64,000 nucleotides of DNA from Fimbriosthenelais zetlandica. Lineage: Eukaryota. The notes below the pieces were generated by a model. The model saw only the letters and a program-made list of their open reading frames with translations, was not told the DNA's origin and ran no database searches. Shown here in pieces: positions 11,874 to 61,801 of the stretch (the stretch's first letter is position 1; every line of letters starts with the position of its first letter). The stretch spans positions 9,238,001 through 9,302,000 of the forward strand of contig OZ365115.1 of assembly GCA_977030845.1 (NCBI GenBank), in the 5' to 3' direction. Made by a program: the position numbers and the translations under genes.

Positions 11874-12166
11874 TCAGCTTTGTGAGCACGCGCTCTGACT
11901 CGAGTCACCATTACTCATTGTGTCTTCGCATACTACCCCCTGAAACTTGTGATACCTTCTGCGGGCATTCATGAAGAAATTGGCAACCGTTGAAACTTCC
12001 AGACCCAGTTGCTTCGCTATGGTTGCCTGCATCTCCTTGGACGGTCGCTTGGTCTCCTTGAAGATAGCGTGGAGTGTTCTACGCTGGATGTCAGTGAACA
12101 CCAGTCGCGGCTTCTTCGGCGTGCGTTCTTTAGGCTGCTGCTGCTCCTGTTCTTTCTGTTTGCACG
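11874..12166 (-). CDS. onecut: ONECUT/HNF6-class homeobox gene, distal terminal coding exon B (linker + homeodomain + C-terminal tail); partial CDS
   Basis: Acceptor tgtcttctgtgctgtctttgcag|CG TGC AAA (phase 1). Translates (A)CKQKEQEQQQPKERTPKKPRLVFTDIQRRTLHAIFKETKRPSKEMQATIAKQLGLEVSTVANFFMNARRRYHKFQGVVCEDTMSNGDSSQSACSQS*. F48/M50 (NFFMNARRR) is diagnostic of ONECUT homeodomains. Confidence 0.93.
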
Positions 12167-13063
12167 CTGCAAAGACAGCACAGAAGACACATTGGTAAGA
12201 GGGGGACAGGAATGTCTTTATATGGAGATGAACCCAATAGATATGTATGATAATACATACATGAATAAACCTGGCTCAAAAGAGGAGCCCAGCTACACAA
12301 ACCAGGTGGTTCTCTGGAATGATAAAGTGGTGCCACCAAGTGTCATCATCATCATGACCATCACCAGCTACTTTAGTCATTCTCACATCAGAGTCATATC
12401 ATCATCATCGTCATTATCGCTGTCAATGTCATTATGGTTATAGCGATCACAGGGACCATGCACCAAGAAACCAAATGATTTTGTATAGAGTGACCTGCCT
12501 ATTGCCTTTGATATCTATATATACTGGTCACGGCAACAGCTTCCGGTCCACCTGGGAGAATCACACCACCACTCGTTGTCACAACACTAAGTAAAACTGT
12601 TGACAAAAAGTTCCTGACACTGAAGACTTTGTCGGCCGGTTTCAGTTTGAATTCGTTGTTAACTCCACATGATTGTTCATCAGTGTATACATAGTCATCA
12701 CCATCTTTAGTTGGTAGTAAATCGAGATCAAGGACAAATGCTGTGTACTCAGTAAGTCATACACAGTAACCACCATCAGTATCATTATTATTAATCACAT
12801 TTCACCATCAATAATAATAACAATAATGATAATCCTAGATATGCTGTCAGTTTGGTTTAGTTCAAAATTGTGATGGCATCATCATGTATCGTCAGTGACA
12901 TCATACATCACTTGAGCATGCCCTGTGACGTATGATACCTCTTGACGGACACATGGCCGGTATCATGCATGCATACACTGCCTTATTATCAAGTAGAAGT
13001 AGAGGGGGGAGAGGGTGGTGATTAACAAGGAGAATAAGAAGGGGAAGAGGTCTGAAGACACAA

Positions 13064-13377
13064 TCAGTTCTGCTGTGAGAGGCTGGTTGTGTCTGACATC
13101 ATCATGGCTTCTTGTGTCATTCGCTGTGATGCTTGTGGTTCATCCTCCATGTATTTGTCTACTGACCGCCTGCGAGCATTCATGAAAAAGTTGGCAACAG
13201 TAGAGACTTTGAGTCCGAGTTGCTCAGCTATGGTCGTTTGCATCTCCTTGGTGGGCCGCTTGGTTTCTTTGTAAATGGCCATCAGGGTGCGCCTTTGTAT
13301 ATCAGTGAACACGAGACGCGGCTTCTTGGGCCCCGGGTTCTCCTGGCGGGGAAGATCATGGTCTTTCCGCTTGCATG
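13064..13377 (-). CDS. onecut: ONECUT/HNF6-class homeobox gene, proximal terminal coding exon A (linker + homeodomain + C-terminal tail); partial CDS
   Basis: Acceptor ttcatttccctttttgcag|CA TGC AAG (phase 1). Translates (A)CKRKDHDLPRQENPGPKKPRLVFTDIQRRTLMAIYKETKRPTKEMQTTIAEQLGLKVSTVANFFMNARRRSVDKYMEDEPQASQRMTQEAMMMSDTTSLSQQN*. The ACKRK start matches the conserved ONECUT intron position just after the CUT domain. Confidence 0.93.
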
Positions 13378-16300
13378 CTGCAAAAAGGGAAATGAAGGCT
13401 AATGTCAAGAAGAAGAAGAAAAAATGACTAAAAATGGAAGGTTTTTATTATTCGGTACTTTAGAAATCATAATGAGAATGTTGGTAGAAGTCATCTCTTT
13501 TGGCGGCCCTAGGAGAAAAGAAATACTAAATGGGCACTCATCTCAAATTATTCTTCTGTTAATATTTTTTGTTAATATTACATTTCTTGTCAATTTTGAT
13601 TGTATCTGATAGAACATGACTTTAAATATCAACTCATCTTGGTGTTAAATTTTGGATATATTTCAACACTTCTATATCATTCAAGTTCATATTATTATTA
13701 TTATCAAAACTTGTGCATAAGTTGGAGGAAAGTAATTGCATTGTTTGCCTAGGGTTTCATGGAAAGGTAGAGCACAAAGATGAGAGGGTCTGGCCACTAG
13801 AGTCTAAAGACAATTTAGACAACTTGCAGGAAAGAAGTGCAAAACTTGATTCGGCTATGTATATATAGAGAGTTTGCTGAGACAAAAAAGCTCTTGTCAA
13901 GGAAGTTGCTTAACTGTATATGAAATAAGTGCCCTTAATGAGATAATGGTAATTACTAGACTATGGGTGCAACACACTCAGACAGAGAGGAATGGCCAGT
14001 AACTCGGAGCAGGAAAGGAAGTGATAATGAACATAATTGGTTCATACTAGAACTGTATTTGGGTTAATTTCTAAAACTGAAAAACCGATTTCACAAATTT
14101 TCTAAAAGAATACTTCTAAGGGTTATCACTTCTGAATCCAGCTCTTTTTTACTGACCATTCACTCCTGAATACAGGTAAAAATTCACACACATATATACA
14201 GTAGAAGACAACGAGGCATGGAGAGTTTGTAACAAAGAAAGTGAAACATACAGTGTGTAAAAATGTCAACATTATTAACACCATGGTCATGGATTATGAG
14301 TCATGAAAAGCGAAGCTGACATTTGGATATATATATAACAACAAAAGCACACGACGATAGTGTGCAGTATTCAAAGAAGAGACAATGATTCATCATAAGA
14401 GAGATGGTTACACAGTTGACCTTATTAGATATTAGCAAGGATTTCGCAAATCCACAATGACATAGTTTTGCCTGGTGAATTAGTATTGAAAATTTCCAGT
14501 GAGAATTTTAAATATAGCTCCATGGACCTGCTTCAGAGAATATGAGATATGATGTTGACTCAAATGATATGGAATTAATTATAAGGATGAAAATGATATA
14601 CCTTCACATGGATTGAAACTATATAGGTTTTGACAATTAAAGAGGTTATTTTTATGAGGTGAAGGGTTCAAAATAATAGCAGAGGGTTCTATGACATTAG
14701 GAATGTAAATTGCCTATCTATTGCAGGCTGGTAAAGAGGCGATTACAGAGATGAGTGGGGAAGCTTTCAGAAGGCATTTTGTGAGCAATTGAAGCCATTC
14801 TATGTACTGTCTCTCCCTTCCTCGTCTCATTGGTTAGCCATGCAAACTCGGACAGGGAGGTATCATTATCTGGGGCGTTGTTGCTGGGGATCAGTCATTA
14901 TCAAATGGGCATCCCTCTCATTTGCCTCTAATAGGGCATGCTCCCTGAGCTTCTCATGCCTTATCCCCCCATTCGCTCCCTACATCACTTCCCAACCCAT
15001 CTTTCCCTTTCAAACAACTGAGATTGCATGAATTTTTCCATATGATTCCATTGCAGCATGGATTTAATTGACAAAGGAACACAATTTGATAACGCAGTAA
15101 TGTTAATAACATTGTAAATAAAATGACTTAATATCCGTTCCCGTACACCAAAAGCATGCATAGAAATGAATAGAGAGAAGGCATTGAAAGAAGTATAACC
15201 ATAAGCAAAGTCAGGGGCTGAAATTAAACCACCACAACCCCTATATCTTAAATCACCAGCCCCTCTCTACCCAACCCCGCCTCTTACCTCCCGAGGGAGA
15301 AACTAGCAAAATAAAGAATTAACTCGCTGCCCTCAGGCCGAGCCAAATCTTCACCCCGTGGGCTGACTAAACGCTTTGATAAATTTTTCACCGCCCTGTC
15401 CCCGCGGTACAATTTGTCGGAGCCGCATGACAAGAGGCTAACTGGGCAACGCTAGAGCCATTAAAGGTCCGCCTAGGATCGGCAGAACGGGCCTCCAATC
15501 TAGCGCCTATCTATCAGATTATGGTCCCACCTAACCACACCCGGAGCCCCCTACCTTCAGCCTATCATGGCTTCATTCTACAGGACAATTCTTCTCAGTC
15601 ACCACGTCCAAATTAAACATCAGTTATAAGGATGCCCTTGCTGCACTTCTATAGCAAAATGGATGTTTTCCGCACACATGTACTTCGAACAAATGTTTGA
15701 GAAAGATGAATAGTTTTATCATCCCAATGTCCTCTGTCATTCACACAGATACAGCTGTGTTTACCCCAATAGTAAATAGTTATTGATTTGATCATCTACC
15801 AATTTACCACCGAAATAGGACGAGATTCTCCCACAAATAAAAATGTCTAAAATCTAATGAAACTGAACAGGAAAGTAAGCATTGTTATCGACAGTTCATT
15901 ACCTGACTGATGGATCGTTTGTAAACACCTGCCTTTAGTCAGATACAGGTGTTGCTAAGGGATACTTCAATGGAATAATGAATTTGAAGGCTTCAAATAT
16001 ATTCCATGCTTTAAGTCAGAGGTACCATATCCTGGCATTCTCCACAGTGACACAAGTAAAGAAACGGTCCATACTCCTCCAGTATGAGAACACCCTCCCC
16101 CAACGCACCCCACCCCCACCTCCTGGCCCTAACCGGGGGCATATTTCAGAAAAGTAATTACATGGATAGAAGGGCAATCCCCGACCGGGGTTAGGTAGGC
16201 CTGGCCCCCTGGCCCTCCCGGTCTAAATCACCCACCCGACCACGCCCCTCCCCCACCCTATCCTCCTCCTATCCTCCACCCCAAAGGATTTTACTATAAC

Positions 16301-19300
16301 TCACAGCCATAAGAACCCCATCTGGCAGGGTGGAGAGTGGCGAGTGGCATAGCCCTGCCTCACACACAGGACAAAACTATTGACTCCCACTGCTTAAAAA
16401 ACAGAAAATATAAATGTCCTCTAACGGCTGTGGCTATTGGCTTTACGGCTGCTGTATACAGTCATAAAGTGTGGTTGAAATAGGCTGTGGGGATCAGGTA
16501 TTTAAAAGATGCACCAATACATCGCCATCTTCTCCTGATCAACATGAACCACGATAAAACTAGGCCCGACTTAGTTGAAAAAAAATACAAACGACTGTTT
16601 CTTTGAGATAATTCATTTTCTTTTCTAATTTATAATAATAATCAAAACATAATGTACTCTTTTTCAGAATCTTCAGTATTTGCCGTGTCTAAAATGTTAC
16701 ATTTTCACATTTCTCCTGTTCAGGATCCGAACTTTGTAGTGTAAATAGGTGAGGGTATTCCCTAAATGGCACTTAGCTGGGGGCGGATTCTAATGAACAT
16801 TAGTCAAGACACTGTCAAGATAGGGTCAAGTAACTCGAGGCTATAACTGGCAAACATTTCAATCCAAATTCTGAATTTCAATGCCATTAAACTTATGAAA
16901 TGCTTTAAGTAAATATAGACTGGGGTTCACTTGCATAGGTTTTACATCATGCTTTGTCATGAAGGAGCCTATATGCTGTTGCATTGGAAACGTGGTGACT
17001 AAAGTTATGAAGTGACAATGATTAGAGTTTTAGCATTAGAAGACGCTCTGAGCTGTTGATTTTATGGAATGAATTCATCAGAGATTGCCACAGGACACAT
17101 AATACGGGATATTGACATCTCTAGCTAGGCAACATCCTAAAATATGACACCAAACGACTATGTACAGATCCCCATTCTCTAAATTCTACTCTAACTCACT
17201 GACATATTCACTCCTTCCAGTGACACTCAGAAACTCTGAAGCTATACTGTGGAATCACACTGATTCCCTCAATAGCTTTATTGAACAGTAATTGAGTTGT
17301 GTCGGAGCATCTGTTTCTCTAGCTCCTGTCTTCGATTTGTCCTCATTTTTTCTCCTTCACGATGGCCAGATTAACACCTGCGGGAGAGGCGCACGTCTTC
17401 ATTCCCCGGACGACTCACAGCCCAGCCTCCGCGCGGAAAAGTAGTTCCTACAAATGGCGGCCAGCCGTGGGCTACACTCGCCTGCTATGTGAGCTAGCGT
17501 GTGGCTGAATGAGTATTCTTCAAGGTCTTTATGGCCTGATTCAAGCTCAAGATTCCTTCACTTTAGTTCAAGGTGTAATTATGGAGAGTTCATATAAATT
17601 TGAGGACTTTAGCAGATTGCATAGAGGCTATATAATCTCTTCTTTGTAACAAACAAGGTATGTTAAAGATATACTTCTCATTTGGTTCTAATAGGGCATA
17701 CTCGCTCCGGCCTCTACATCCTATTTCCCATGTCTTCATTGTTGGATTGTATCTTTTCACTAGACAACACTAGAGCAAAAGTTTGACGAAGGAACATAGA
17801 TTGTTAACCATCAGGAAACTTGAGGTTTGAAAGTCAACCACCAACAAGCAGTGTAGATGAAGGCGTAGGTGATGGAAAGGCAAGCTGTAACAAACTGTTA
17901 CATGATAGAACGAAGCCAGAGTGAGAGATACGAGACCTCTCTACGGCCATCTCTTGATCCCGCCCACATTCGGGAGTGACATGCTTGAATAGGCCTAGAC
18001 AGGAAATCAATGCTCTCTGACATTGGTATACTTTCCTGCCAAAATTCACAACGCATTGTCATCCGCACATTGAAACAACTTCAGAAAGAAAGAGAGGCAG
18101 AAAGGGAGAGATTCACAGCCGATCACAGCCATCAGATATGAGGGGAAAAACATAGAGAAAATATTGAAAAATACTCTTTCAGTTGCGGGAAGGAGGGATT
18201 AATATGAAGTTGGAATACGAAAGCGCAAAATGGAGCTCAAACGCCATTCCACGATACAACAGAGTAGCAGAATGAGGGGCCTGTAATCCCTTTGATTCCA
18301 ACAGTTAACGACCATAACACAGTGATTACAAACTCGTCATTGTAATTTCCACATCCATTAAAATCCCATTAAAAACGAGCCGAGAGGGAAAGCATTTGAA
18401 CTGAATTAGAAAAATTTTCCAAGCTGGGGCGATTGGAGCTTGGGAGTTTTGGCTGTAAACGAGCATTAGAATCACGCTAGCGTTCACATCGGGAAGTGAC
18501 AGTGCACGCGTGCTGCGATGAGCAAGCAAATAAAAAAAAGGCTTCGCTCCACTGTGCTGCCATTTTTTCCTCTCTCTCCACATTCTGTCGCAGCGACTTG
18601 CGTACTCTTGTCTGAAGAGCGGCAGCTGATGATTCTGATTGGCCTGAATTACAAATAAAACGCCTCCCAATCCTTTTATCACAAATCCTCTCTGTCTCTC
18701 TGGTGTGTGAATGGTTTTTTTTCTGCCCTAAAATCCCGCTTTTTCCTCGCCTCCCGAGAATAGCGGGTCATGCTTTAAATGTCTTGTTGCTTAGTTCAAT
18801 TAAGCAGACAATGGAAGGGAATCCTCTCCTCTCCACAGGGACTTATTCTGATGTAAATTACTGTAAAGAAAATATAGTGTTAAAAACTTTAAAATCCCTC
18901 CCTTTTCACGAAAACTTCACATATCCCCTTTCTCCCTTATAGCTGGGTATGAAAGCTACCAGCGAGTGTTCTACGCTGTCTTAAGTGGATAACTAAGTTT
19001 ACATCAACATCCTCTGGTTTCTAAAGGACGATTGTCATCCAAGGAATACACATATATACTCCAAAAGGAGCTGAATCTGAAGCATTGGCTTTACTTTAAA
19101 CTTCTAAATACCCACAAGTATTTTCTCTCGAGTAGTTTCAAGCCAGCCTTTACTGTCGTCTAACCTTTTAGCTTCTAATGCATAAATGCATACTAAACTT
19201 TAGTGATATATCCTCATCTTCAGGATACCAATCCACTGAGGACGTTTATGTTAAGTAAGTACAAAGCTTGAGTCAAGTGATGTTGATATGATCTCTTCAA

Positions 19301-22300
19301 GGTGGTTATTATATGCTCTAGTTTTATGTTTCTGATCCATCATCTCAAAGAACTAAAAGATACTGTAGCATCTACACCACAAGACAGGTTTCTCTCCTAG
19401 GTTTACATCCAGCCCCTAACCACAGTTCCCCCGACCGCACAAGACTAGTACACATGAAATTCCATCCCTTTGTCATGGAGCAATAGTCCATTGATTGGCC
19501 CTATCCTTAACAATGTCTTGATATTTGCATGAGTAAATTTAATGCCCATGCATCAAACAGACATTGTACTTACTGCGGGTGTGGAACTACAATTCCAAAC
19601 TTCAATTTCATTTATCACGGTTTTTGAATCTTGGAGGTATACTAAGGGAATATAAATGGTAGATCTGGATGACAGGTATAAGGCATCTACACCTGGGTGA
19701 AATATAACTTGTCCAAGCTATATAACCCCACACCTCGGTTCAGCACCTCCGCGCATCCGATGGCTATCAATATTGCACTAGGACTCACACTAGGGTAGAC
19801 ATAGGCCAGTGAGGGAACGAGCCAAGTGAAAGAAAGTGCATCATGGTTTATGAATTGTCACCAACGTAAAACATGACCTACAAAGAGGTACTCGGGGAAG
19901 TACCTTCTAAAAAACATAGCACCCGAAGGCTTTATGATACTCTTTGATTCACAGCGCACTTCTGACATGAATTAAAATGAACATTTAATAACGCATTCAT
20001 GGACTGTACCTAGGGTTATGGCACTATTTGGTTATGTCCCCTCATCTAGGGGGGCTTTATTTGTCACCTAGTTCCCTGTCCAAACCCGGGGGTCTTGTAT
20101 TCACCAACCGTCTCCATGGCGACTGCAAACATGGCCGCCGATTGGAGGCCTATGATGATCTAGTCGCACCTGAGTAGTAGGACCATACTCCCTTTAACGC
20201 TCCCTCTCTCCCCTTCAAGTCCACCTTGTGTCAACTATCCCAGGTAGAAGTGATACGTTTTGGGTGTTGGACGCATACTACGCGTGTGTTTGTTGGCAGT
20301 GGAATTGGGGCGTTGGACCATGTAATGTGAAGTCCTTATACAGCCAGTAGACTGTGGTAGTGGTAGTAGACTCAGTCATGGGACTGGCGTCGACTGTCTT
20401 GTATTAGACTGTTTTTGTGTGAGCACCTGTGAGCAAACTCAACAAACTCCAGGTGTGGCACACAGAGGAAAACTCTCATGGGCTTGTGTGGATGGGAAGG
20501 GGTCGACATGAGGAAAGACTGGAGTTTGTAATCAATATAATTCCTACATTAAATATACAACACATAACTTTGTTATAAAAGATGGAAAGGAACTTTCAAG
20601 TTCATCCATGTTGAAATGGTTTTCTTTTGTTGAAGGCTCTAAACTGGAAAACTCCTAAATCTTGCATCGGGGCATAGTTAAAAATGAACCCAATAGGCAG
20701 AGATAAATTAGAGCCAACTAGAGGAACAGGACCATTCTGACATAATGAATGAACCAAGCCCCGTGTCCAGTCAGTCTACTTATAAACAAACCCCCAATCA
20801 AGCACCATGATTCAGACACCAAGCTGCCTAGGTCACCGACCACTGGTCATTCAATGGTCAAACCACGACAGGGTAATGGTCATCCCCTGGATCGGACACC
20901 CCATCAGGCTGAGGACAATGTGTGTTTAGTGTCACACAACTGTCAACTTCAGCGCCCTCCAGTGTCACTACCTGTCACTAACGTCATAGATCAAGGACCT
21001 TGGAAGGGCATTGTGGAGTGAAGGGCTATGTGTGGGTCTTTAATCTCCCCCAGGTTTGGTATTAACTCAACTAGCCACCTGATGAGGGCCATGTTCTGGG
21101 CAACTCTGGGCTTTAGTGGTCTATTTTCCCAGAGGAAATATTGCATTCTCGCAAGGACAAGCTGGTTTGGGAAATGTACCATTTCACGGCACAATATCCT
21201 GGGATTTTCAAGTTACACGTCTTTCTTTACAAGAACTCAGTTCATTCCCTCTCAAATGTGAAATTAATTCTCAATGAGGAGAAATTCAAATATGTTGATA
21301 AAGATCAGAAAAAATGCATGAAGATTCCCATGGCAATTGGCTGTTATGAGCATTCTTCAGTTAAAAACAAACGGACAAGAAAAAAGCATTTGATGGTGAT
21401 CGTGCGATGCACAATCACTCACTTTAAGGCAATTATTGTCCAACACATTCTTTGTACAACATAATCGGTTCAAGGGATTCTCTCCAAATGCCAGCTGTTG
21501 AAATGCTTTCCCCTCACCTACTTTAGATTTTCTCCCATCAGGAATAAAAACACATTTAAAAAATAAGAACAAAAGAAAGGAGTCTGCCCACATGTTTAAT
21601 CTCACAGTCTCCCTACCACCCTGGAGCATCGCCTGCGACAGGGAGAGGCTGATCACATCTTAAATTCCCCACTTTGTTGAGACTTGCTGAGACTCTGTGA
21701 AGGGTGAAAAGCTCCTTTCTGTTGTGGCGTAAGGTCTGGAATTGCCTGCACACATGGCTTGCAGTTTGTGGGTGAGTAAGAGTGGTGGGTGGGTTGAATG
21801 TGTGATCCTAGAATGTGTAAGAGTGAATTGGAGTGGTCTTGGTAAGAAGTGCTAGGCTGAGCTTACATTTCATTGTAAGTTGCCGGAGGGCCAGAGCATC
21901 CCGTTGCGGGATGCATCTACAGAGATGGGAGCAAGGATGCAGCCTTGGGGCACACCACCTCCACCACAGTGGTGCCTCAATTTGTACGATCCTATCTTCC
22001 ATGAACCACTTCTGGAGGGAGGCAGTAGTCTATTGCCCGAGACAGATGGCTCAGGTCCCTCAGCTCACCTCCCTTTAAATGCAAGTCCCCACACAGAGTG
22101 CACCTCAAGGTAAACTCTGATGAAACAAATTGTTTGTCACCTTAGATTTGCAGGGATTAATTATGTCAGAGTAGTAGTTGATGTCCCAGAGCTATACACG
22201 CAGAGGAAAGAACCCTGAGATTCATCCCCAAACTGACGTATATCTTAAAATGGGAAGAAAACAAGAGAAGAACCTGACACAGACACAGTCTAAGCAGAAG

Positions 22301-25300
22301 CAATAAAGATAAGATTTGAAGGAGCAGTGATATAGAGAGGAGACAATAGGAAACATGGAGGAACAATTCATGAATGGAAGACATCTATAAGACTGCACAT
22401 GACTCTGTGGGGTCACAGCCCACCGCAGCAGCTCTTCCCTTTTTTTGCCCCCCTCAACGGAAGTGGTGAGGGTAATGTAGCGTGCCCTCATGGAGGGTGA
22501 GTGAATACCGGAAGTGCGTCAGCATGACAGGGCTGGACATGTGGGAGGTGAGGTGGAAGCTCCGGGCTGAGGAGGCCGGGGTGGAAATGCGGGGCAAGAA
22601 AGTGGGATGAGTGGTCAGTTACCCCGGCAACTTAACTCGCCACTGTCAAGTTCAGACAGCTGTGGTCACTACCCCAACCAGCCCACAAGCAGACAACTAT
22701 GAGAGTATGATGCCCGGATGACAAGGACATGGCCAGTTCATTTGTGAGATGCACACTCGCAGCAACTTCTTCAGATTGGGTGTCAGCGACGACAAATGGC
22801 GCCCTGCAATTGAAAGCGATGGCTCCTGATACTAAGTGCCGAATCATAGAGCACTAGCCCAGGTCCTGAGTCAACCACGCAAGTGGAACTCTCTTATGTG
22901 AAAGGCGCGAAAGGTCAACTGATGGATGAGAGCGAGTGTAGGTATTGGCAGAGGAGCCCAAATTGCATTGCACGTCATGTGAAAAATCAAATCTATGCAG
23001 TTTGGAGACCCGAAACAAAATCTACAGAGTGAAGGCAATCTGTAAATTGGCGAGTTTTGCTCCTGCCTTGTCTGAGCAAAATGCCAGATTTATCAGGTTT
23101 AGGTGCGAGCCCTAACCACGTTTACATTAATTGCAATGACAGTCAAGTAAATCCAGCGTGTCTGCTAGGCTGGGGGCACTCTACATGGGATTTGCTCCTC
23201 GCAAATTGTATTACCCAGATTCTGTTCCAGGGGTTAAACACCAAATTGACATTATGAAATTGAAACACACAAGTTTCAACGGCTGTCCTAATGGGATTCC
23301 TCCCGTGACAAATTGAAATACGTTGTGGCATCTGTGGGCCTAATTGCCATTAAAGCTACAGAGCTTTCTTGTAAGGCATAACAAGTGAAGGACCCAAGAA
23401 GAACCCTCAAGTGTTTACCTACAAATTTGTACCTCAAACACGATATACATACTAATGATCTAAGTGAATATAGTACTTATATACTTCAATAGTTACAATT
23501 GAACATTTGATCAAATTGTCCTAGAGTAATGATGGAATTTTCTTGGGAGACACAGTATGTCACAGTATTGGGAATAAGTTGCGTCCCCTACAGGGAAGGC
23601 TACTCAGGAGAGGGCAGGTCTTGTGGGGACAACACGTTTGGAGCTTGGTGGCAAATTGTGAGCAGGGCCTTGGGAGTGACCAGGCGCCTACGGAGCCTAA
23701 TTCTAATTACATTGGCAGCTGGTGAGCCACTCGCCTGGATCCCAATCACATCGGAGTGGCTCGAGAAGACATCTTGAGGAAATTCTCAAGTTCAACGTGA
23801 CAGGATCACTGGCTGGCTTGTCGGCAGGGTCAGGGGCTGGAGAGGGCCAGAAGGCGTACTCTATCCAAGAACAGGGGCCAAGATTGGCTGACAAAGGGCT
23901 TGCCATCCCACTTGTATCTGTGACCAGTATATCATTAAACCTGCTCTCCAGATTAAAAAAATAAAAATCTGAAAAGTTTGCAATATCATCACGGTACAGG
24001 ATCTACTTTTCAATACGGCATGCACAATTCAGAAAATAAAACATTTCCTTACAAATTCCACATTCTTCCCAAATATGAAAATTAGGAATTTAGTTGATGA
24101 TCTTGACATTGAGAGAAGTTGGACATTGAGGAAAGTTGCAGATTGTTGTTTTCATACTCAAGGCTTGGTCGGAAAGTGCAGTGCTTGGGTGAGGAAAACA
24201 CACAAAATGCAAGGGTCAGAATCAGCAGCCTTGACTGTGAATAGATGTGGCGGTCTCTACACAGAAGGGGCTAATCTGTTAAAGGCCTGGCAGTATTAGT
24301 TTGCCGGGGGTTTGATCTATCTCTGCTGCGGTCATTTGACTTGCTAATACAGGTTGTTAGGGGCGAATAAAGATTGGCACCGGCTGGCTTGGCAGGGACA
24401 GGAAATCCGGGGTCTTAGAGCAACATATGACTGGAAGAGAGGGGCTAAAATGCCAGGTAATAAGCGCTTAGTGGTGAACATTGGGCCTGGAGTTATCACT
24501 TATGTTGTGGCAACACCCCCACTTTAACACCGTCCCCACATCCAAAACCTACCCCGACAGATTCATATCATCTATCGTGGCAAGGCGAGCCGTAGAGACG
24601 CAAATTAATCCTGACATGTTATATTAAAGTTATCACATTAGTGGGAATTGTTCCACAACAAATCACTTAATATCGCCCATGTTGGGATAAGCTGCCATAA
24701 CAGGAATTTGTATGAGGTGTTGACAGGCTGCTTGAAGGCAGGGAAGGGGTCGGGGGAAGGTCCCCGGTTATAAAAGGTTCGCACATCATTTATATTCGTA
24801 GAATACAACTCGCTGTCAATTTATGCAATGACGGTTTACTCCGGGTGACATATAAGGAAAAATGCCAGCTAGAGAATACCGATCAGAATATTCCCCACGG
24901 AATATGGTGATTTTTCCAGGGTAAAAGGGATATTTACCAAGGTAAGTCTGACATTCAAATGTCTGCAACAGGGATGGCACGTCCGCAATTAAATGAAACA
25001 AGGACTCCTTAAAAACCATGTCTATACACAGTGTAAAGGAAACCTAGTCTGACGGCCATAATTTTTAGTAGACCTGACACATTCTCGGCCGCTAAAAAGT
25101 GCCATAGTCATCCACTTGTATAATCTGGGGAGTGCTTAATTAATTATGACATCTCCCTGTGTCTGAATGCAGTCTCCAGTCCCCTTCCATTCTCTCCTTG
25201 CAATTCAATAGTAAAATACCTCGTCTCTAGTTGCGTCTTTCAGACTTCCCCTACAGGCTAGCATCGGGAGACACACCGTATCGACCTACATAGAGGCTGG

Positions 25301-28300
25301 CGGACACACACGTCGATACGCTCTTCGATTTGCCCCACATACCACTCCAATGCTAACTCGCCCATATCGAATCCTTCTCGCCTCCCCCTTTCCACCCCGG
25401 TGTCCCATCTTTTCGCGAACATTCTAGATGGGGTGGCGGGGGACAAGAGCCTAGGTTAGATTATACAGGTCAATATTATAGACCTTTGTCTCCCTGCCAC
25501 TTGCCACCCTGACCCCACCTTGTCAATGGGTGGTAATGATTAGGTTAATACAAGGCCATGGAAAATTAGGCCAGGCTATGGATTACCGATAAGCCGAGCG
25601 TGCAAACCACTGTCAGCCTAGCTAACATTATAGACGAGTCGATGGCAAGTTTAGACTAAATTGGACTCTATATAGGCCTGGTGTCCATTTCTAGAGTGTT
25701 TCTGAGAAATAAGCAATGCTTTCTTTTTGAAAAGCAGCATATACTTTGATCGAACAGTGTGGCCATTCGAAAGTTCTGAAAAACTTTCATTTCCAAACCA
25801 ATGTGTAACACATTGCGCTGTAGGCAATAGAACAGATTGGTGTTTTTCTCAAGCCTCGCATTGTCGAATCGGGTGCCCATGTTACACGATTCAAGGAGCA
25901 CCATTATGTCATTCATCTAATAATACATGCATTCTGATCAATATTTACTTATCAAAATCTCTTGTCCTTTTTATTTGCTAACTGAAAATTCACACCTGAG
26001 CCATTGGCCTGGAGCTGACAATATGTGTAAACATAATTACTCGGTTCTCTAATGATGAGTCATGGATTGGGGTGGAGTGGGCCGGGGTTAGCTAGTGCTG
26101 GTGGGCAGGCCTTGAACATTAAGTTGATTTAGGTGTAGAGTGTATGAACTGTTGTAGCTCTTGCCTTGCTCCGTGTTTGGAGCGGTGTTTGTTGATGGCT
26201 GAGCCAGGCGTCCCCACCTGGAAAGACGATATGACGGCCAACACTGATACGTGGATAATTGGCCAGCGTTCATGCCACACACGGGCTCTACCTGCTGACG
26301 TGCACTGATGACAACCACCATGACGCCAGGTGAAAACAGGCAACGTCTAGATCTACCACTGTACGGACCGCAAAGAGAGAGAGACAATCCCCCCTTTCTA
26401 GAAGCAAGGCCAAACGGGAGGGACTTGGGAATAGAACCAGATGCATGGGGCATCCTGTTACAGGGGCAAACAATCCGGCGACAATGGCCGATCTGCGGGC
26501 TTCTGTTATTGGAGGCAAGCTCGGCAAACTGGATCAGTCTCCCTGCATATTGTCTGTCTTTTGTTACCATGGACACGGGCCGAAGTAATCCTTGAAATAC
26601 GAAATTAATATCTGGCGCATGGAAAGAGAAACCGGCGACGAGCGTGTTTTATCACCCGAGGTGTGAGCGTATAAATACCTCCATGATTGCCTCCATATCA
26701 GATGCGCTTCTCAGCCAGATAAATCTCCAACACACAACATCAACTTTTTAAATCTAATTATTTATTCCATTTAGTTCAGTGGCTTCCACAGTGACAAACA
26801 TTTCATGGTGGCGGCAACAACATCAATCTTCATCAGCAGGATGCTTAACATATGTACCCAATGTCTGAGCTGAATTCAATCCCTATAACAAAGCCAAAAA
26901 AATGTCTTTTATGCTTGTTATGTTGGGGGAGTTGGAGGCGGCAAGGGGTTTTGCTTTACATGCTTCATCTGTCTAAAGGTCAATAAGGGCCATGTCTGTA
27001 AAAAGCCCGGATGTAAACGCTCCCACTTTTTTAAAGCGATCATGCGAACTATCCAATTTTTTAGATGGGCTTCCGCCGTGCGCGGCGCTGGCTTGGCCTT
27101 CTTCTGCGGTGTCTACAAAGTTCCTTAACTCCTGCTGCATTTCTCAAATTGCTGCCCGATCAATCCCGCTTTCATAACCTGCCCTCCTGCCTCCCCCTTC
27201 TGACGCGACTCAGATGTAAATCCGTCTGTGGCCCTGTTTCGCATGGGCTTCATCGCGTCCGAAAGCTCCGTTATGAAATTAAAATCTCAGCAAATGGACA
27301 GCCCCCTGGGTGCACGAGTCCATTTCATGCGGGTCCGCAGCCTCCCAAGACACCATCTTGTGGTTATCTGATTGGGCGGAGGGATAGAGAAGAACAATGC
27401 TCTCAGAGAGTGGCTGTCTGCCATTCTTACCCGCCCTCCTCCCAGCTCACAGTGGGGTAAGACTCTTGGCTAAGACAAGGCGACCTCTGAGTGTACAGCC
27501 TTTCAAAGCGTTCATCCTTGCATGACTCGTGCTTACCAACTCCTGCAGGCTCAAAGTTAAACCTGTGCTTCATTCCTGTAACCATGCCAACCCACATGCC
27601 CATACATCTCCTCTGGTCCCGGGAGAGACAACTTCAAATACGCACGGCCCTTCTTCTGCTGCCCGCGCCCACCGCGTCTATCACAGAGGGGCAATTAAAC
27701 AATCTCTCTTCTTGTGCTTCCTACCAAATGTAACTATGGCAATGCTCCCCGTGCGATTTACACACCAGGGAAAGGACAGCCGAGGAAATGGCCCTTTCTT
27801 CCGCAGGACAAATCTCTAAAAGGCCCTTCACACGCACGATCAAATGGCCCTCCTCGGGAGGCTCCTTACCTGAGGGCCTCTACAATACACTCACACTCTT
27901 TTTTCCACCTCACTTTTCTCAGCCCGGCGATAGTTTTAAATCATCCTCGAGCTGTTTATCTCACTCCCTCTATGCTCATCGCCCTCTGGGGCCAACTATT
28001 TTATAAATACCCCATAAGGCTTCCATCCATCTAGCCCCTCTCTCCCCCTCTACCCAACCATACCCTCTCTCGCCAAGCCTCTATTTGTTCTCACCAACTT
28101 TTTTGCGTCTCTTTCTCACATCATTGCTTCACAATACAATCAACCCTGTGGGGCTTCCTCAACTCTTTCCAGACTGGCAAAGATTTCAATCCCCACACTT
28201 TTTTTAATCACAGGCCCGGTAATTATTCTCCCCCATCCCCCATCTACCCTTACCCAGTTGCAGCTGTTGAGAAGTGGCAGGATAGAACCAGAGGGGAAGA

Positions 28301-31300
28301 AATCCATGTATTGGATTCACCCACTGACACATTTTCACTGGATCCATCCTCCTCCTCCCTCACACTAACAACAACGGAGTCCTCGCTCGATACAAAAATC
28401 ATTGTTTTGGACCAATACTTGTGCACTCTGTTGACATGAGTACCAATAAGACAACACAAATAGTGTCGCGGCATGACCATGCCACTTAATTCGATTCGGC
28501 CATTGATTGGCCGCGCCTCTCGATCGAGGTGCTCCCGGGGAGAGGAGCTGCTCCTCCGCCGATAGACTGTAGCAGCCAGACGCTGTGATAACGATCGTTG
28601 AGCAGCCAGTGTGTACACTTTTTATCCACCTATACCTCCACACACACCCAGATCCATGAATAAGACAGCCCAACGTCTCTCCAAAGACTTAAATGGAATT
28701 TCCATAGACTCTTCACGACTAATATTCTTGTGATAATTTCCCCTGTTTTGAGTATCAAGATATAATATATAAAGATAAATTACCTATTCATATCTACAAC
28801 TGATAAGATTCCAAAATGTTCCTTCATACATTCCATATTTGGATCCAAGAAACATACAGAAAACATGGTGGTATGAATGGTTGGTATCTGACAGCCAACT
28901 CCGAACCTGACAAGATAAGGACTCATCTGAGACTTGGGCTGTGGCCACGGGTCAAGCTAGGAGGAGATAGGAGCATCGGGGGCACTGATGCCAATACACG
29001 AGCCGCGTTATATATGTGTAGGACTACAATATGACATTACATGTATACTATGCATATGACAGTATACACAAGTCCAATGACACAGTAAAGTAAAGAAACA
29101 TTGTATGGTTGTAAAGAAACCATCAAGATATTTGTGCCAGTGCAAGAGACAAAATTGATACATATAGGTAGTAATTTATATCATAGTTCTAAGACAATTT
29201 CAATTTTGTCTCTTATGGAAAATATTTTTCATATGCTTAATCATCTCGTCACTCAAGTCAGTAAATATTTAAAACACATGGGCTTTTCACACCCTAGAGA
29301 GGACGATTAGCCTAAATATTGCCTACAAGTGATGCAGGTCTAAGCATTATTTAATCCCTTCATAAAAAATCAATGCCATGTTTAAAACATGAAGCGCCAG
29401 TGATTATGAGTTTTTACGCCTGGCCCATATTTTCTCTATCATCCTGGAGATTTGATTGATCGCAGTCTCTAATCAACACATATTCACCTCAGCTAACTGT
29501 AGGTAATGCTCAAATCCTCTAGGCTTTTAACCACACACACAGAGGCGAGAATGTCGTTAATATCCTTATGTTTGCTCAGAGATCCTGTCTCCTGCCTTAC
29601 AGATTAAGAATAATACCAAATCCAAACTCCAGGACCCTGTCTCTGTCCACCAACTTCGCAGAATCACTAAGAGATTTCTTATATACTACCACAACTTTAG
29701 TTTTCTGCCACAATTCTTAGCCTCACTTGAAATTCAATTCACTTCCTGTTGCGCCTGCGCACTGCATGCACAAGAGACAGTTGAAGGTCATCGATTGGGA
29801 GGAAAACAGGGTTTGAATTTCCTTTCCAAATCAAGTCCAACTTGAAATCTTACAGTAAATGGGGGTTTCACTATGCCTTTAACCCATGCGAACACAATGG
29901 GAAGGTATATGGCTTTTAATATTGAGAAACATTTCCACATTACTGCGAAGGATGAGGACATTTTTTCTTATTTTCTTTTTACATAGGGCGAGGCTTCAGG
30001 AATTCCAACTTTAATGCACACAGAAGTATAATGAATGACCCTAAAACGCGTCTAGAACTTATAATGCCGTTGACGAAGAGCCCTGTTGACAATTTTATTG
30101 CCAATTTGGAGCCAGCGTGTTTGGAAAATGTGCGGCGGGCAGGATGAGACGGGGGAGAGGGTGAGCTGGGGGCGAGAGAGGAGTGATTAAGCGTTCAGCA
30201 AGCAGGCCCAAGGCCAGCACTAACAACTTGATGAGAGGGACATCCACAGTCAGGTCAAGGAAACAAGGCCAGCAATGAAAGAATCCACAGTCAAGGCTTT
30301 TTGTTGCCTTCCCCACTTTCTAATGAATCTAAACCTAAAAGAAAAACTTCATGTGTTTAACATCCTAGATGATGTCGTGTTCTGAAAGGAATAGCACTTT
30401 CTGTACTATCTCGGTTGCCATTGCATTTTTTCATCTAACCTTTGTGAACTGCAGGCTTATTTTAAGCCAGGATACATTGCTGGTTCATATAGGGTTTGCC
30501 ACACAAAAGACATGGATGGTAAATTGTTAGAGACTTATATGGGTATGATGAATAGGAAAGGTACCACATCAAAGGTGTACCTGATGTACACACAGATGTA
30601 GATATGAAGATAACCACATAAAGAAACCAGAAACTATCCATCAACATCTTTAATGCGAACACTGGTATAGAGGCTGCAGATAACATTAGTAATGTGGGTG
30701 AGTTATCTGCCAAGATGTAATCAGATTCTGAAATCCCAAGTTATTTTGAGCATTTGATTGACAAAGTAACAATGCTGAAATAGCTAATTCCCAAAGCCTA
30801 TATTTCAGATTTCACTAAGGTTCTCTTCTCTGCCACTGGACCACAATCTAGGAGACAAAGGTAAGTGGGTGCCAGCACCCCTAGTGCCGCTTGATTACCA
30901 CCAAAGATGCTGGCTTTTCACCCACAGACGCCATTGCTGCTAATGGCGCCAAAAGAACCTTCCGGTGGGTCATACCAGACGACATTGGTACCTTGGCTCA
31001 AAGTCCTTCAGTGTCAGCCTCTGAGACCCAGAGGGTCTGTGGAAGCACACTAATTAGGTGAACTTCACACTTCTCAAAGCTACTCTGAGGGGAAAAGAGG
31101 TTTCTCTGGCTGTGTTTGTACTCGCTGTGGAAACCGAGAAGGATTTTCTGACCAAACCCCATGGGCAACACCATCAAAAGCGTGATGCCATCTACACAAC
31201 TCCCTCTGATGTGGGACTATTGAATAAATTGGCTGCTTCATGGGGTTAGGATCATTGAAACGTACACCGAAAGCACCTAATAACCGAAAATACATGTAAT

Positions 31301-33514
31301 AGTGCATTTATTAAGGTTGGAAGTGCTGAAATTAGCTGTCACACACAAAATACAGACCCATAACCTTGGGAGATTAGCTCAAGTAGGGTTTAGTTGCACA
31401 GCCCCTTCCACCTGTCACCTTGCACTGTTATTAATGGCCAATCAAGCAATCTCCTCATAGTCAACACAAAGGTAACAAGCCGGTAGATAACCTCCTGCCG
31501 ACCGCTTTAACGGTAAGAGGTGACAAGGGAACAATTCATATCAGCCTCCGAGCCGCAAGAACGCCACCAGGCGACCGGCGTGTAATGTGATTGTTGCCGT
31601 GTAATTTACCAGTGGGCTGAATAGGATTGGCATGAATGGCCAAATGGTTTATACAGGTCCCAATGAAGGCCGGTCATTTACGCTGATTTCTGAAGTAATT
31701 CTGAGTCTTTTGGGATAAATTTGCTCACATTTGAGGTTATCATCAAGGAACAGACTCAATTCAATGATAAACTCTTTGCATTTATATCAGGCCTGATATA
31801 TTGCGTAATGCAATAGATGCGGCACCTTCATTTCAAATGTAGCTTGCGCATCATAGATGATACTTTTGGCATCTCGCATACCTGAATCTTGTCCTCCCAA
31901 AGCTTTGAAATACGGCCTCAGTCTCTAATCACCAATTTCAATATCACATCAGTCTGTCCATCGAATCCTATTAATGACTCTGAACTGGTATCATGGAAAC
32001 CACAAATGGAAGGGGGACGCTTATTGATTGGGACGATCAGGGGTGAGGATATGAGGCCACATGCTGCATGTTGGTGGAGAGGGTCAGCAAGCCTTGACAC
32101 CTCACACTGTGAGTGACTTATTATCATGTCATTGATCTAACTCATACTCTTCATCCCCCAACTAATAAGGCATTTATTGAAACAGCAGCCAGCGTCAATG
32201 CCAATGACTTTCAATTCACTCCGACCGAAGGTGCTATCCATGTAAATTGTCAAAATGATCTCTTTCACATTCAGCAATTATTATGGTTGGTATTTGTCTA
32301 ATTTACCTCTATATAAAAAGAATAGGGCTTTTTTTGATAATTATGTATCTGAGATACAATGACGTTGCTGTGACGTAGAACACCAATGCAACCAACCAAC
32401 CGTCCGACCAACAAATTTCCAGGAACAGAATACAATGAATATTATATATCATACATGTATACAAGATACATTATGCAAATGAAACTAGCCATAAAAGTAT
32501 GACGCTATACCATCTGTGTTATCTCATTGCTTGCAAACACAGGTCTACTTTTTGTGATGAATATGAATAATATATTTTGTGCACAGCTGACGGTCCACTC
32601 TTTCCTAAACCAATATACCTGGGGGAGGTCTCAGGTTTAACCCCCTACTCCCCAGGCCACTGCCTATCACTTGGCCTAAGTGTGAGAGAGGTGAAGGGCT
32701 ATTGTCCCAAAGCTGTGTGCCGTGCGCTCAAGAGCTCTTGTCACCTCACGGGTTCTTGCTCCTTCACCGCACCTCCGTGTGACGTCACAAGGCACACGTC
32801 ACAGCGTGATGTCGTTCCAACGTTCTTCCATCTTTTACACACACTAAGGGATAAAGGGGACAGGAAGAAAAAGGTTCCGACGTCGGCAATCACACAAAAA
32901 CAGACGTCCCTACGTCACCGAGCCGTTCTCTCCAGGCGATGTGTTCCCAACCCCATTCTCTTCTCATTGTGCGCGGCGCCTTTTTTAAACGTCATGATCT
33001 TGTGTTTGCAAAGTGTGCTTAGTTTTTTCATTCAGTGTGTGGCAAAGGAAGCAATATTGCGTTTTTCAACGCTTGCTGGGGATTGAAATTCAACACGAAT
33101 GTATGCGTACAGTCAGTTATGATTATGATGACAATATTTCTGGAACTGACTGAATTTCAGCATCCCAAATTGGAATGCTTGTTCACCTGGAAAAGGGTTT
33201 CAATGAACTAGTTTTCAAACTGTACAATACAATATCTGTTTAGAAAACTGCTGTTCAGGCGTTCAGCTCCATGACTCACCATAAAGGGAGGATCAGCAGT
33301 GTCACTGTCTATTCACGCTAGCCATATAAAACAGCATAAAGCAACAACAATGTAAAACAAAGCATCGTTCATAATCAGCATCAAGCTCAAAAACCAGCAA
33401 ACACCAGTGTTGAGGCGCTCTGCGAATACGAGTAAAACACACGGAGGTGTTTTTGTTATTTTCTTGTTTTTGTTGCGCTGTGAACATTCAGAACCGAGAG
33501 AGTGAATGTGGAAT

Positions 33515-33540
33515 GAGAGAGAGAGGAGAGAGAGAGAGAG
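33515..33540 (+). repeat. Interrupted (GA)n microsatellite
   Basis: gagagagagaggagagagagagagag. Confidence 0.85.
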
Positions 33541-34626
33541 GTGGGTGGCAATGGTGATGATGGTTAAGGGAGGAGAGTAGGGAGGAGGGGGCCTGGTATA
33601 ATTTGAAGGCCGTTATTTGGTCCTAATTGCCATTTGTGCCTGGTAATCCCCGCCCCGGCCACGGCCATTAGCCAGAGATCAGACCCAGCCTCGCTGGCGG
33701 TGCGAGCCCGGGCAAGGTGAGCGCCAGATCCTGCCTGGCTGGAAATTAAGGACGGGAATGAGAAAACGCCGCTGCTGTATACAATTGTATTGTTGCTGCA
33801 GGTCAGTAGTTATGTCTCAAATGGGAGATTTTAGATTGTCATAACTGTATCTAGACTCTACAAGCAACTGCCTTGCTCAAGCTTAATAAGGAAGCGACTG
33901 TCTGTTTTTCGAAGCGCTTTATACTTGGAAAAATGGTTCTTGAATATCGAACCAAAAATGGTTATTGAATGTTGAACCAGTATGCACAAACACATAAGGA
34001 ATGAAGCAAGAGAAACCAATGTAACAGCCAGAAATTACTTGGGGGTAGAAATGGAAATAAAACGTAAACTGTATATCAAGGGGAAGAACATCATCAACTG
34101 GAGTGAGACGAAGCTGCAGGAATAGAAACTTTGTAGGTAAGAAAGCCAAGAAAAGCTTAGCTGGAAAAAGTAGGAAGCTAAGCAATGGAAAAACAGAAAA
34201 GCAGCAGGATCAAGGGAGCAGGGGAAGGTAGTAGGTGGAGGAAGAGGAGGAGCAGGAGGAGTAGGAATGTTGCGACAGCCTTGCCTCCAGCTGGAGATCT
34301 TCCCACAGGAGGATTTGAGAGTGTGTGAGCATGTATTTGTAACCCGCTCAAATCCCACCACCCGAACCATCCCCCCCAACGCTTCCACCACCACACTCAG
34401 ATCTTCTAGCGGATAAACCCAGGCTTCCATCCAGCCACAGAGATCCCCTCCTCTACCCGGTACACTGGAGGCAGGCCAGTATACCATAGACTGGTATAAA
34501 CCCAGCTTCTACCACCACCTTTATACCAGTGGTACACATGTGGTGTTAAAAAAGATGCTTGACTACTTTCATCAAAGGGACTATAGCGCATAGACGAACT
34601 GATGCTTGTATTTAGAAGCAAGGACT

Positions 34627-35982: not shown

Positions 35983-36107
35983 TTACCTGACACTCAGGCT
36001 ACCTTCTATATACTACTTGGTCATAGTAGTATATGGAAATGCATGATTGATGCAGGAATGCCATGAACAAATAACATGCAAACGAATGCATTTCTCACTA
36101 AGAACAG
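35983..36107 (+). repeat. Left arm of a ~125-bp inverted repeat pair
   Basis: Reverse-complement match to 37708-37833, including a 53-bp perfect stretch (35999-36051) and only scattered mismatches elsewhere. Contains an internal hairpin TATACTAC-ttggtcata-GTAGTATA. Confidence 0.92.
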
Positions 36108-40800: not shown

Positions 40801-40880
40801 AAAGTGGTTTCATTATGACGTTTGAGGTTATTTTATGCAGTAAGTGTATTTCCTAACCGCAATTGATGATTTTCGAGAGC

Positions 40881-61798: not shown

Positions 61799-61801
<3 letters not shown>

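What the first reader, a model, noticed from the sequence alone, without database searches (positions are those of the whole stretch)
11874..13377. One Onecut gene with two interchangeable homeodomain exons: candidate homeodomain swapping by alternative splicing
Seen: two complete linker+homeodomain+tail exons lie in tandem on the same strand, with acceptors 1211 nt apart. Each follows a polypyrimidine tract ending TTTGCAG, starts in phase 1 at (A)CK, has a 16-residue linker to homeodomain position 1 and ends in its own stop. No CUT exon lies between them, so exon B cannot belong to a separate intact gene. Over homeodomain codons 2-55 there are 6 amino-acid differences, while 28 of the 48 codons for identical residues differ synonymously. 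That indicates an old duplication with both copies under purifying selection, not a dead pseudoexon. Established: ONECUT proteins bind DNA through CUT plus an F48/M50 homeodomain, normally encoded by one terminal exon; rat HNF-6 alpha/beta isoforms differ by a linker insertion, not by homeodomain. Inference: one CUT domain is spliced to either of two homeodomains and C-termini, giving two paralog-like factors from one locus. I do not know of this being described for Onecut, but could not search.
Basis: partly seen in the sequence, partly recalled or inferred. Interest (0 to 1): 0.9.

Follow-up and report, generated by a model that had tools for sequence, protein, structure and literature searches.

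The report
Onecut gene with two homeodomain endings
A probable annelid's Onecut gene ends in two complete, anciently duplicated versions of its homeodomain, both kept intact by selection in many worm genomes, so one gene very probably makes two regulators, though RNA using the second version was not found.

Summary
On the minus strand, two linker+homeodomain+tail coding blocks lie in tandem: A at 13377-13064 and B at 12166-11874. Each follows a pyrimidine tract ending in CAG, starts in phase 1 and has its own stop. No CUT exon lies anywhere in the 64 kb.

The same A-then-B pair occurs in at least eight other independent assemblies. Capitella teleta and one further contig carry a divergent second copy. 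A-type and B-type exons form separate, strongly supported clades.

B is under very strong purifying selection. Against a distant relative it shows 43 base changes, 39 of them at third codon positions, and 2 amino-acid changes (dN/dS about 0.01).

An RNA contig from a sister species joins the CUT exon through a 37-residue linker exon to acceptor A. It then runs unspliced through B and about 5 kb further. B therefore sits in the 3'UTR of the A mRNA. The switch would be a choice between two acceptors in one terminal unit, not two separately polyadenylated exons.

No transcript spliced to B was found, and the run and read tools yielded only DNA of relatives. The base-contacting homeodomain residues are identical in A and B. 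The differences lie at surface positions 17, 36 and 41 and in the tail. My literature searches found only linker-insert Onecut isoforms. This scan has noted similar exon pairs in other transcription-factor genes of this genome.

The parts
13378..64000 (-). Part of the giant intron upstream of exon A. It holds no CUT exon and no match to the sister species' linker exon.
   Evidence: tblastn with P0126, P0125, P0139 and the L004 protein gives only the two homeodomain hits. In the L001 species the CUT exon lies about 169 kb upstream on the same contig and strand.
13743..13982 (-). Conserved non-coding block in the intron, 0.4-0.6 kb upstream of acceptor A. Its function is unknown; it could be an enhancer or a splicing regulator.
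   Evidence: 93-98% identical to the sister species in three of its four 60-nt bins (85% in the fourth), against 79% over the whole alignment. 73% identical to L001 over 221 nt. It has stops in all frames.
13378..13420 (-). Acceptor A: a pyrimidine tract ending tttgcag.
   Evidence: The sister species' RNA contig L004 is spliced exactly here, with the junction at L004 1056|1057.
13064..13377 (-). Exon A coding part: 16-residue linker, homeodomain A and tail A (begins RRRSVDKY), including the stop codon. This is the annelid-type Onecut homeodomain.
   Evidence: It falls in the A clade with 100/99 support, together with Capitella teleta. dN/dS is 0.012 against the sister species.
12167..13063 (-). 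The A-B interval. It is 3'UTR if acceptor A is used and the end of the intron if acceptor B is used. It has no AATAAA or ATTAAA.
   Evidence: The L004 RNA contig is collinear across it. No exon-like conservation with L001. A block at 12423-12602 is 83-90% conserved in close relatives.
12167..12200 (-). Acceptor B: a pyrimidine tract ending tttgcag.
   Evidence: A pyrimidine tract ending in AG, followed by C-N and TG[CT]AA[AG]CA, is present in every species with a B exon.
11874..12166 (-). Exon B coding part: linker starting CKQKE, homeodomain B and tail B (begins RRRYHKF, ends in a CSQS motif), including the stop codon.
   Evidence: The B clade has 99/99 support. Against the sister species: 20 nt changes and 0 amino-acid changes. 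Against L001: 43 nt changes, 39 at third positions, and 2 amino-acid changes, dN/dS 0.010.
6968..11873 (-). Shared distal 3'UTR (minimum extent).
   Evidence: The L004 RNA contig stays collinear down to 6968. Patches conserved with the distant L001 lie at 11144-11271, 10781-10850 and 7698-7784. The first poly(A) hexamers after B are at 9834, 9331 and 8129.

Best explanation
This is the 3' end of a single Onecut gene of a probable annelid. Its terminal region carries two tandem, anciently duplicated coding modules, each with a linker, a complete homeodomain, a C-terminal tail and a stop.

The upstream exons end in phase 1 with a G. They comprise a large exon encoding the N-terminus and CUT domain, plus at least one phase 1-1 linker exon, and they lie more than 50 kb away. 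These exons splice either to acceptor A (13377) or to acceptor B (12166).

If acceptor A is used, the protein is CUT-HD(A). Its mRNA carries the untranslated B module and a long shared 3'UTR. If acceptor B is used, A is removed with the intron and the protein is CUT-HD(B).

The two homeodomains share the recognition helix and all base-contacting residues. They differ consistently at surface positions 17, 36 and 41 and in residues 56-59 plus the whole tail. The isoforms therefore probably differ in partner binding, CUT-homeodomain cooperation or DNA-backbone contacts, not in core DNA motif.

Shown: the anatomy, its conservation, the selection on both copies, use of acceptor A, and read-through across B. 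Inferred: use of acceptor B and the functional difference between the isoforms.
For: Anatomy and phase.

Conservation: the A-B tandem occurs in L001, L002/L003, L004/L005, L006 and L009-L012. L008 holds a B exon at a contig end. Capitella L007 and L015 carry a divergent second exon. All have a pyrimidine tract ending in AG and phase 1.

Orthology: separate A (100/99) and B (99/99) clades.

Selection: B dN/dS is 0.010-0.011 with substitutions concentrated at third positions, and the tail is constrained as well. A DNA contig of another relative shows the same changes spaced in multiples of three.

No other way to translate B: no conserved in-frame ATG precedes it, and the A-B gap shrinks to 299 nt in L006.

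RNA: L004 is spliced from CUT to the linker exon to A, then continues collinear with the genome through B and about 5 kb further. The exon 1 donor and the linker exon both end in phase 1 with G, which fits both acceptors.

Gene structure: one CUT exon lies about 169 kb upstream on the same contig and strand in the L001 species. Only one CUT exon lies in 32 kb of the Capitella locus.
Against: No transcript or read joined to acceptor B was found. The listed runs (X1-X5) are DNA of relatives. The protein searches could not target long B-ending proteins.

The one RNA contig available passes from the linker exon into A and on through B without a break. B-splicing was therefore rare or absent in that sample.

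Some annelid-like contigs have A-type exons with no second homeodomain within up to 3.4 kb, so B is dispensable in some lineages.

The upstream exons of this genome lie outside the window.
Confidence: 0.8

Rival explanations
1. B is a real coding exon, but it is joined to a different upstream exon. This could be a first exon from a promoter inside the giant intron, giving a homeodomain-only protein without CUT. It could also be a second, diverged CUT exon hidden in the giant intron, making two interleaved genes.
For: The upstream exons are not in the window. The intron is large enough to hide exons, at about 169 kb in a relative. A highly conserved non-coding block lies just upstream of exon A. 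My recollection is that some C. elegans Onecut genes lack a CUT domain.
Against: B keeps the CK[QA]K[ED] linker start that in Onecut proteins directly follows the CUT-domain exon, with the same phase and split Ala codon as A. Capitella has a single CUT exon in 32 kb. In the searches made, one CUT-exon sequence turned up in the L001 species' sample, on each of its two contigs. The conserved block at 13743-13982 has stops in all frames.
Confidence: 0.12
2. B is a relic of the duplication. On this reading it is an untranslated pseudo-exon in the 3'UTR of the A mRNA, or it is conserved for an RNA-level function of the UTR.
For: B lies inside the A mRNA's 3'UTR in the sister species. No B-spliced RNA was found. 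B is absent downstream of A in some annelid-like contigs.
Against: The open frame, stop position, acceptor and phase are kept in at least eight taxa although synonymous sites are saturated. 39 of 43 changes against L001 are at third positions, with 2 amino-acid changes. That pattern marks a translated sequence, not an RNA element or neutral DNA.
Confidence: 0.03
3. The tandem is an assembly artefact or a recent segmental duplication private to this genome.
For: None was found beyond the general possibility.
Against: The same order, spacing class and orthology occur in many independent assemblies and in one RNA contig. The divergence between A and B is saturated at synonymous sites.
Confidence: 0.01

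Closest known systems
ONECUT / HNF-6 class homeobox genes and their known isoforms (rat HNF-6 alpha/beta; little skate Onecut1 LSOC1X2)
   Same: A single CUT domain plus a divergent homeodomain with F48 and M50. An intron lies between CUT and homeodomain at the LRLA|A-CKRK position. Isoforms are made by alternative splicing in the CUT-homeodomain linker. The sister species here also has a 37-residue linker exon.
   Different: The known isoforms change only the spacer between the two domains. Here the whole homeodomain and C-terminus would be exchanged. The review PMC10515288 and my searches describe no alternative Onecut homeodomain.
Mutually exclusive tandem exon duplicates in homeobox genes, for example Meis exon 9 in Capitella teleta (Irimia et al. 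2011, PMC3140891)
   Same: A tandem duplicate of a coding exon in an annelid homeobox gene, giving two proteins that differ by a few residues. It has the same evolutionary origin: exon duplication instead of gene duplication.
   Different: The Meis case is an internal cassette pair. Here the duplicated unit is the terminal coding block with its own stop, the distal copy sits in the proximal isoform's 3'UTR, and exclusivity follows automatically from acceptor choice.
Insect BTB-zinc-finger genes with alternative 3' exons encoding different DNA-binding domains (lola, broad, tramtrack, fruitless; cited from my own knowledge)
   Same: It would work the same way: common N-terminal exons are joined to one of several terminal exons, each encoding a complete DNA-binding module and a stop.
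   Different: The protein family is different (zinc fingers, not a homeodomain). Those modules differ in DNA specificity, whereas here the base-contacting residues are identical. There are two options here, not up to about twenty. This is a likeness in mechanism only, with no family membership.

Membership tests
ONECUT class homeobox gene | Homeodomain of the Onecut type with F48 and M50 | tested here: met
   Both A and B carry the NFFMNARRR helix. Pfam Homeodomain scores are 44.6 and 48.1 bits against a cut-off of 22.9. The best solved-structure matches are HNF-6 (2d5v, 1s7e) and ONECUT2 (8t0f) at E 1e-26 to 1e-31.
ONECUT class homeobox gene | A single CUT domain in the same protein, upstream of the homeodomain | tested here: inconclusive
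   There is no CUT exon in the window. It is met for exon A in the sister species' RNA contig L004 (CUT 117.6 bits). In the L001 species a CUT exon lies on the same contig and strand. It is not shown for exon B.
ONECUT class homeobox gene | Conserved intron between CUT and homeodomain, with the exon starting (A)CKRKE | tested here: met
   A starts (A)CKRKD and B starts (A)CKQKE, both in phase 1. Molluscan, nemertean and other Onecut proteins show the same boundary motif.
Alternative exons arising by tandem exon duplication | Homologous exons in tandem on one strand with the same phase and intact splice signals | tested here: met
   a pyrimidine tract ending in AG and phase 1 for both exons in all taxa examined.
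Alternative exons arising by tandem exon duplication | Both copies maintained by purifying selection | tested here: met
   dN/dS is 0.012 to 0.024 for A and 0.010 to 0.011 for B. The two form separate orthology clades.
Alternative exons arising by tandem exon duplication | Mature transcripts that use one copy or the other | tested here: inconclusive
   Use of A is shown in L004. No B-joined transcript could be retrieved, and no RNA run was listed for this species.

The most novel reading that the evidence does not exclude
For a very long stretch of annelid evolution, one Onecut locus has acted as two paralog-like regulators. A regulated choice between two acceptors 0.6-1.7 kb apart, at the end of a 50-170 kb intron, attaches the same CUT domain to either of two homeodomain-plus-tail modules with different partner or affinity properties. 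Pancrustacean-like animals have independently evolved a half-homeodomain version of the same device. Terminal DNA-binding-module duplication would then be a recurrent, overlooked alternative to gene duplication for homeobox genes.
Probability: 0.45. Interest if true: 0.72.

Novelty: new variant of a known kind. Interest (0 to 1): 0.58.

Why it matters
Onecut factors are conserved regulators of neuronal, sensory and gut or liver cell types. Vertebrates diversified them by gene duplication into ONECUT1, 2 and 3. If annelids diversify them by swapping the whole homeodomain and tail within one gene, this gives a natural experiment on what the non-DNA-contacting homeodomain surface and C-terminus of Onecut proteins do. 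It would also be a clean example of exon duplication substituting for gene duplication.

There is a practical consequence for annotation and expression work. Exon B sits inside the A mRNA, so read coverage or probes over B do not report the B isoform; only junction-spanning reads or primers do. Gene predictors will normally miss B. The Capitella gene model, which is partial, stops within exon A and takes in no second exon.

Tried and rejected
- RNA runs. A search for RNA runs holding the region listed none. A search for runs of any kind listed five, all holding only DNA contigs of relatives that include the acceptor-flanking intron.
- Protein searches for a CUT-to-B protein. The B exon alone retrieves only short genomic ORFs because of the length filter. 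A search with the species-specific N-terminus found no B-ending protein. A trick alignment, with a long first sequence plus B exons, also found none; the profile used all columns, so it did not act as a B-specific filter. Absence means little here, because even the A-isoform ORF of L004 is not in that database: it is cut by the contig end.
- JGI metagenome scan. It found more genomic A-B tandems but no B-spliced annelid transcript.
- Two contig look-ups returned no DNA.
- My recollection that C. elegans ceh-21 and ceh-41 share a CUT domain by splicing was not borne out. The papers read describe an operon or cluster of three Onecut genes.
- A cassette exon in the conserved block at 13743-13982 was rejected because it has stops in all frames.
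- A small first exon in the A-B interval was rejected: there is no ATG-led frame ending in a phase-1 donor and no deep conservation.
- A scan for recursive splice sites in the intron found none.

Full report
**1. Observation**

The minus strand between 13420 and 11874 holds two tandem coding blocks. Block A runs from 13377 to 13064 and block B from 12166 to 11874, stops included. Each follows a pyrimidine tract ending tttgcag. Each begins with the last two bases of an alanine codon (phase 1), followed by Cys-Lys. Each has 16 residues before homeodomain position 2 and carries the Onecut hallmarks F48 and M50.

The acceptors are 1211 nt apart. Over homeodomain positions 2-55 I count 6 amino-acid differences, and 28 synonymous differences among the 48 codons for identical residues. 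Both blocks match Pfam Homeodomain above threshold. Their best solved relatives are HNF-6 and ONECUT2.

No CUT exon lies between them or anywhere else in the 64 kb. This was tested by tblastn with three full-length Onecut proteins and with the sister species' own protein. The rest of the window upstream has almost no long ORFs, as expected of a giant intron.

**2. What organism**

Exon A carries a signature in helix 2 and the tail (IAEQLGLKVS, then DKY). This signature is shared with the NCBI-named Capitella teleta protein and with many unnamed worm-like sequences. It is absent from the molluscs, nemerteans, brachiopod, arthropods and deuterostomes compared. The genome is therefore most likely an annelid. 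Other agents of this scan reached the same view on other windows.

**3. Conservation of the arrangement**

The same A-then-B order on one strand is found in:
- a sister species, in L004 and L005, whose DNA is about 79% identical to the window;
- L001, which is 96% identical in B protein although its non-coding DNA is mostly unalignable;
- L002/L003 and L006;
- four further metagenome-derived contigs, L009-L012.

L008 holds a B exon at a contig end. In every case both exons keep a pyrimidine tract ending in AG, phase 1, the C-N/TG[CT]AA start and their own stop. Acceptor spacing ranges from 592 to 1742 nt. The gap between the A stop and acceptor B is as small as 299 nt, which leaves no room for a CUT exon or a plausible promoter plus first exon.

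Capitella teleta (L007) and one other contig (L015) have a more divergent second homeodomain exon 0.3-0.5 kb after A. It is again in phase 1 behind a pyrimidine tract. It keeps a KQKE-like start in L015 and an ancestral-looking RDKW tail.

A maximum-likelihood tree places all A-type exons in one clade (100/99 support) and all B-type exons in another (99/99). Both clades arise from the lophotrochozoan Onecut polytomy, and Capitella's second exon is a long branch. The duplication therefore predates the split of all B-carrying lineages sampled.

Some annelid-like contigs carry A-type exons, of two paralogous kinds, with no second homeodomain within up to 3.4 kb. B has apparently been lost, or never existed, in some lineages.

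**4. Selection**

| Comparison | Codons | Base changes | At third positions | Amino-acid changes | dN/dS |
|---|---|---|---|---|---|
| Exon B, window vs sister species | 96 | 20 | 18 | 0 | 0.011 |
| Exon B, window vs L001 | 96 | 43 | 39 | 2 | 0.010 |
| Exon A, window vs sister species | 103 | 19 | 18 | 1 | 0.012 |
| Exon A, window vs L001 | 98 | 66 | 50 | 11 | 0.024 |

Flanking DNA in the sister-species comparison is only 45-80% identical. A small DNA contig of yet another relative shows changes spaced in multiples of three across B.

The B tails also share a C-terminal motif, [CIV]-[ST]-Q-S, near or at the stop. B is therefore translated.

It cannot be translated from an unspliced RNA. The in-frame sequence upstream is closed by a stop in this genome. 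The only ATG in front of B in relatives is not conserved. The first conserved Met is inside the homeodomain.

**5. RNA evidence**

L004, a 7.7-kb contig assembled from a public run of the sister species, is a spliced transcript. One ORF of 455 residues runs from the N-terminal region through the CUT domain. It continues through a 37-residue linker exon and crosses a junction that coincides exactly with acceptor A, then reads to the A stop.

The same contig then stays collinear with the genome through the A-B interval, exon B and about 5 kb more, down to window position 6968. L005, from another run, is unspliced at acceptor A.

The window has no AATAAA or ATTAAA between the A stop and acceptor B, nor for 2 kb after B. 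The same holds in 4 of the 6 taxa checked. Deeply conserved patches lie only downstream of B. The A mRNA therefore carries B in its 3'UTR, and both isoforms would share the distal UTR.

The exon-1 donor (LRLA then G|gt, seen as intron read-through in genomic ORFs) and the linker exon both end in phase 1 with G. Either can join A or B in frame and recreate the Ala-Cys-Lys start.

In the L001 species the CUT exon lies on the same contig and strand as A and B, about 169 kb upstream. Capitella has a single CUT exon 11.4 kb upstream of A in a 32-kb locus.

I found no RNA joined to acceptor B. No RNA run was listed for this species, and the listed runs are DNA of relatives. The protein database could not be queried for long B-ending products. 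The unbroken L004 contig suggests that B-splicing was at most minor in that sample.

**6. Mechanism proposed**

I propose a choice between two 3' splice sites at the end of a giant intron. Acceptor A gives CUT-HD(A). Acceptor B removes A and gives CUT-HD(B). Mutual exclusivity is automatic, because A ends in a stop and has no donor.

Using standard homeodomain numbering (Pfam register), A and B differ in this genome at positions 17, 20, 27, 32, 36 and 41. Across taxa, the type-defining differences are:

| Position | A type | B type | Outgroups |
|---|---|---|---|
| 17 | hydrophobic | His | His |
| 36 | Glu | Lys | Gln |
| 41 | Lys | Glu | Glu |
| 56-59 plus the tail | S-x-D-K-Y | [YLF]-H-[KR]-[FY] | S-x-D-K-W |

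The N-terminal arm and helix 3 up to position 55 are identical in A and B. By established homeodomain structural knowledge these include the base-contacting positions 3, 5, 47, 50, 51 and 54.

I therefore infer that the isoforms recognise the same core motif. They would differ in surface electrostatics (a reciprocal charge swap on helix 2 and the following turn), in the end of the recognition helix and in the tail. That points to differences in partners, CUT-homeodomain cooperation or affinity. This last step is inference only.

**7. Comparison with what is known**

Known Onecut isoforms alter only the spacer between CUT and homeodomain. Examples are rat HNF-6 alpha/beta (from my own knowledge) and the skate Onecut1 48-residue spacer isoform (preprint 10.1101/2025.07.30.667746).

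The 2023 review of CUT homeobox genes (PMC10515288) mentions no alternative homeodomain. The C. elegans ceh-41/ceh-21/ceh-39 loci are a cluster or operon of separate genes. Phrase searches for alternative homeodomain exons found nothing relevant.

The closest analogue in kind is the mutually exclusive tandem duplicate of Meis exon 9 in Capitella (PMC3140891). The closest analogue in mechanism is the family of insect BTB-zinc-finger genes with alternative 3' exons for their DNA-binding modules (my own knowledge).

Within this genome, the scan has already noted tandem alternative exons in the DNA-binding domains of Vsx, Pax2/5/8, ARNT and AP-2. This is therefore one more instance of a habit of this lineage, which tempers the surprise.

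**8. A parallel case seen in passing**

Marine metatranscriptome contigs of a pancrustacean-like Onecut (L019, L020, L024, L025) carry a second ORF a few hundred nt after the stop. It follows a pyrimidine tract ending in CAG and encodes the homeodomain from position 22 onward plus a tail. Its protein is identical between two species whose DNA there is only 67-76% alike. mRNAs of related species (L028-L031, L043) use that second type as their only homeodomain end.

This looks like an independent, partial-homeodomain version of the same arrangement. I did not follow it further.

**9. Verdict**

It remains unproven at the RNA level.

It needs two refinements: the mechanism is acceptor choice within one terminal unit that shares a 3'UTR, and DNA-contact residues are unchanged. 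It is a new variant of a known kind, of moderate to good interest.

Noticed in passing
L019, L020, L024, L025 (about 200-600 nt after the first stop); L028-L031, L043: Pancrustacean-like Onecut mRNAs from marine metatranscriptomes carry a second ORF in their 3'UTR, preceded by an acceptor, encoding homeodomain positions 22-60 plus a tail. The ORF is protein-identical between two species. Related species' mRNAs use that type as their only homeodomain end. This may be an independent half-homeodomain version of the same device.
   Followed up: partly
L007:22910-23331 (Capitella teleta KB293180.1) and L015:4522-4872: A divergent second homeodomain exon lies 0.3-0.5 kb after the A-type exon. It has a phase-1 acceptor and a tail of the form R[SC]RDKWQ[DE]E. 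It is not part of the partial Capitella gene model, whose range ends within exon A.
   Followed up: partly
L045-L087 (JGI host-associated metagenome contigs): There are two distinct A-type annelid Onecut paralogues, with tails SLDKY[LV]DD and STEKYCDD. Neither has a second homeodomain within up to 3.4 kb downstream. These lineages may have diversified by gene duplication rather than exon duplication.
   Followed up: partly
window 13743-13982 (-): A non-coding block in the intron 0.4-0.6 kb upstream of exon A is more conserved than the exons. Three of its four 60-nt bins are 93-98% identical to the sister species (85% in the fourth), and it is 73% identical to a distant relative. It contains TAATTA-like sites.
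   Followed up: partly
window 12423-12602 (-): A block inside the A-B interval is conserved at 83-90% in close relatives, including a DNA contig of run X1, but not in distant ones. It is a candidate regulator of acceptor choice or a UTR element.
   Followed up: no
window 240-2505: A cluster of seven tRNA genes on both strands (Pro-AGG, Gln-CTG, His-GTG, Leu-TAG, Pro-TGG, Cys-GCA, Glu-TTC) lies downstream of the Onecut 3' end.
   Followed up: partly
L089 and L001 (ENA contig ctg38370_34x_l): In a related species the CUT exon and exon A lie about 169 kb apart on the same strand, making this one of the larger introns. A scan of the intron part in this window found no recursive-splice-site motif.
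   Followed up: partly
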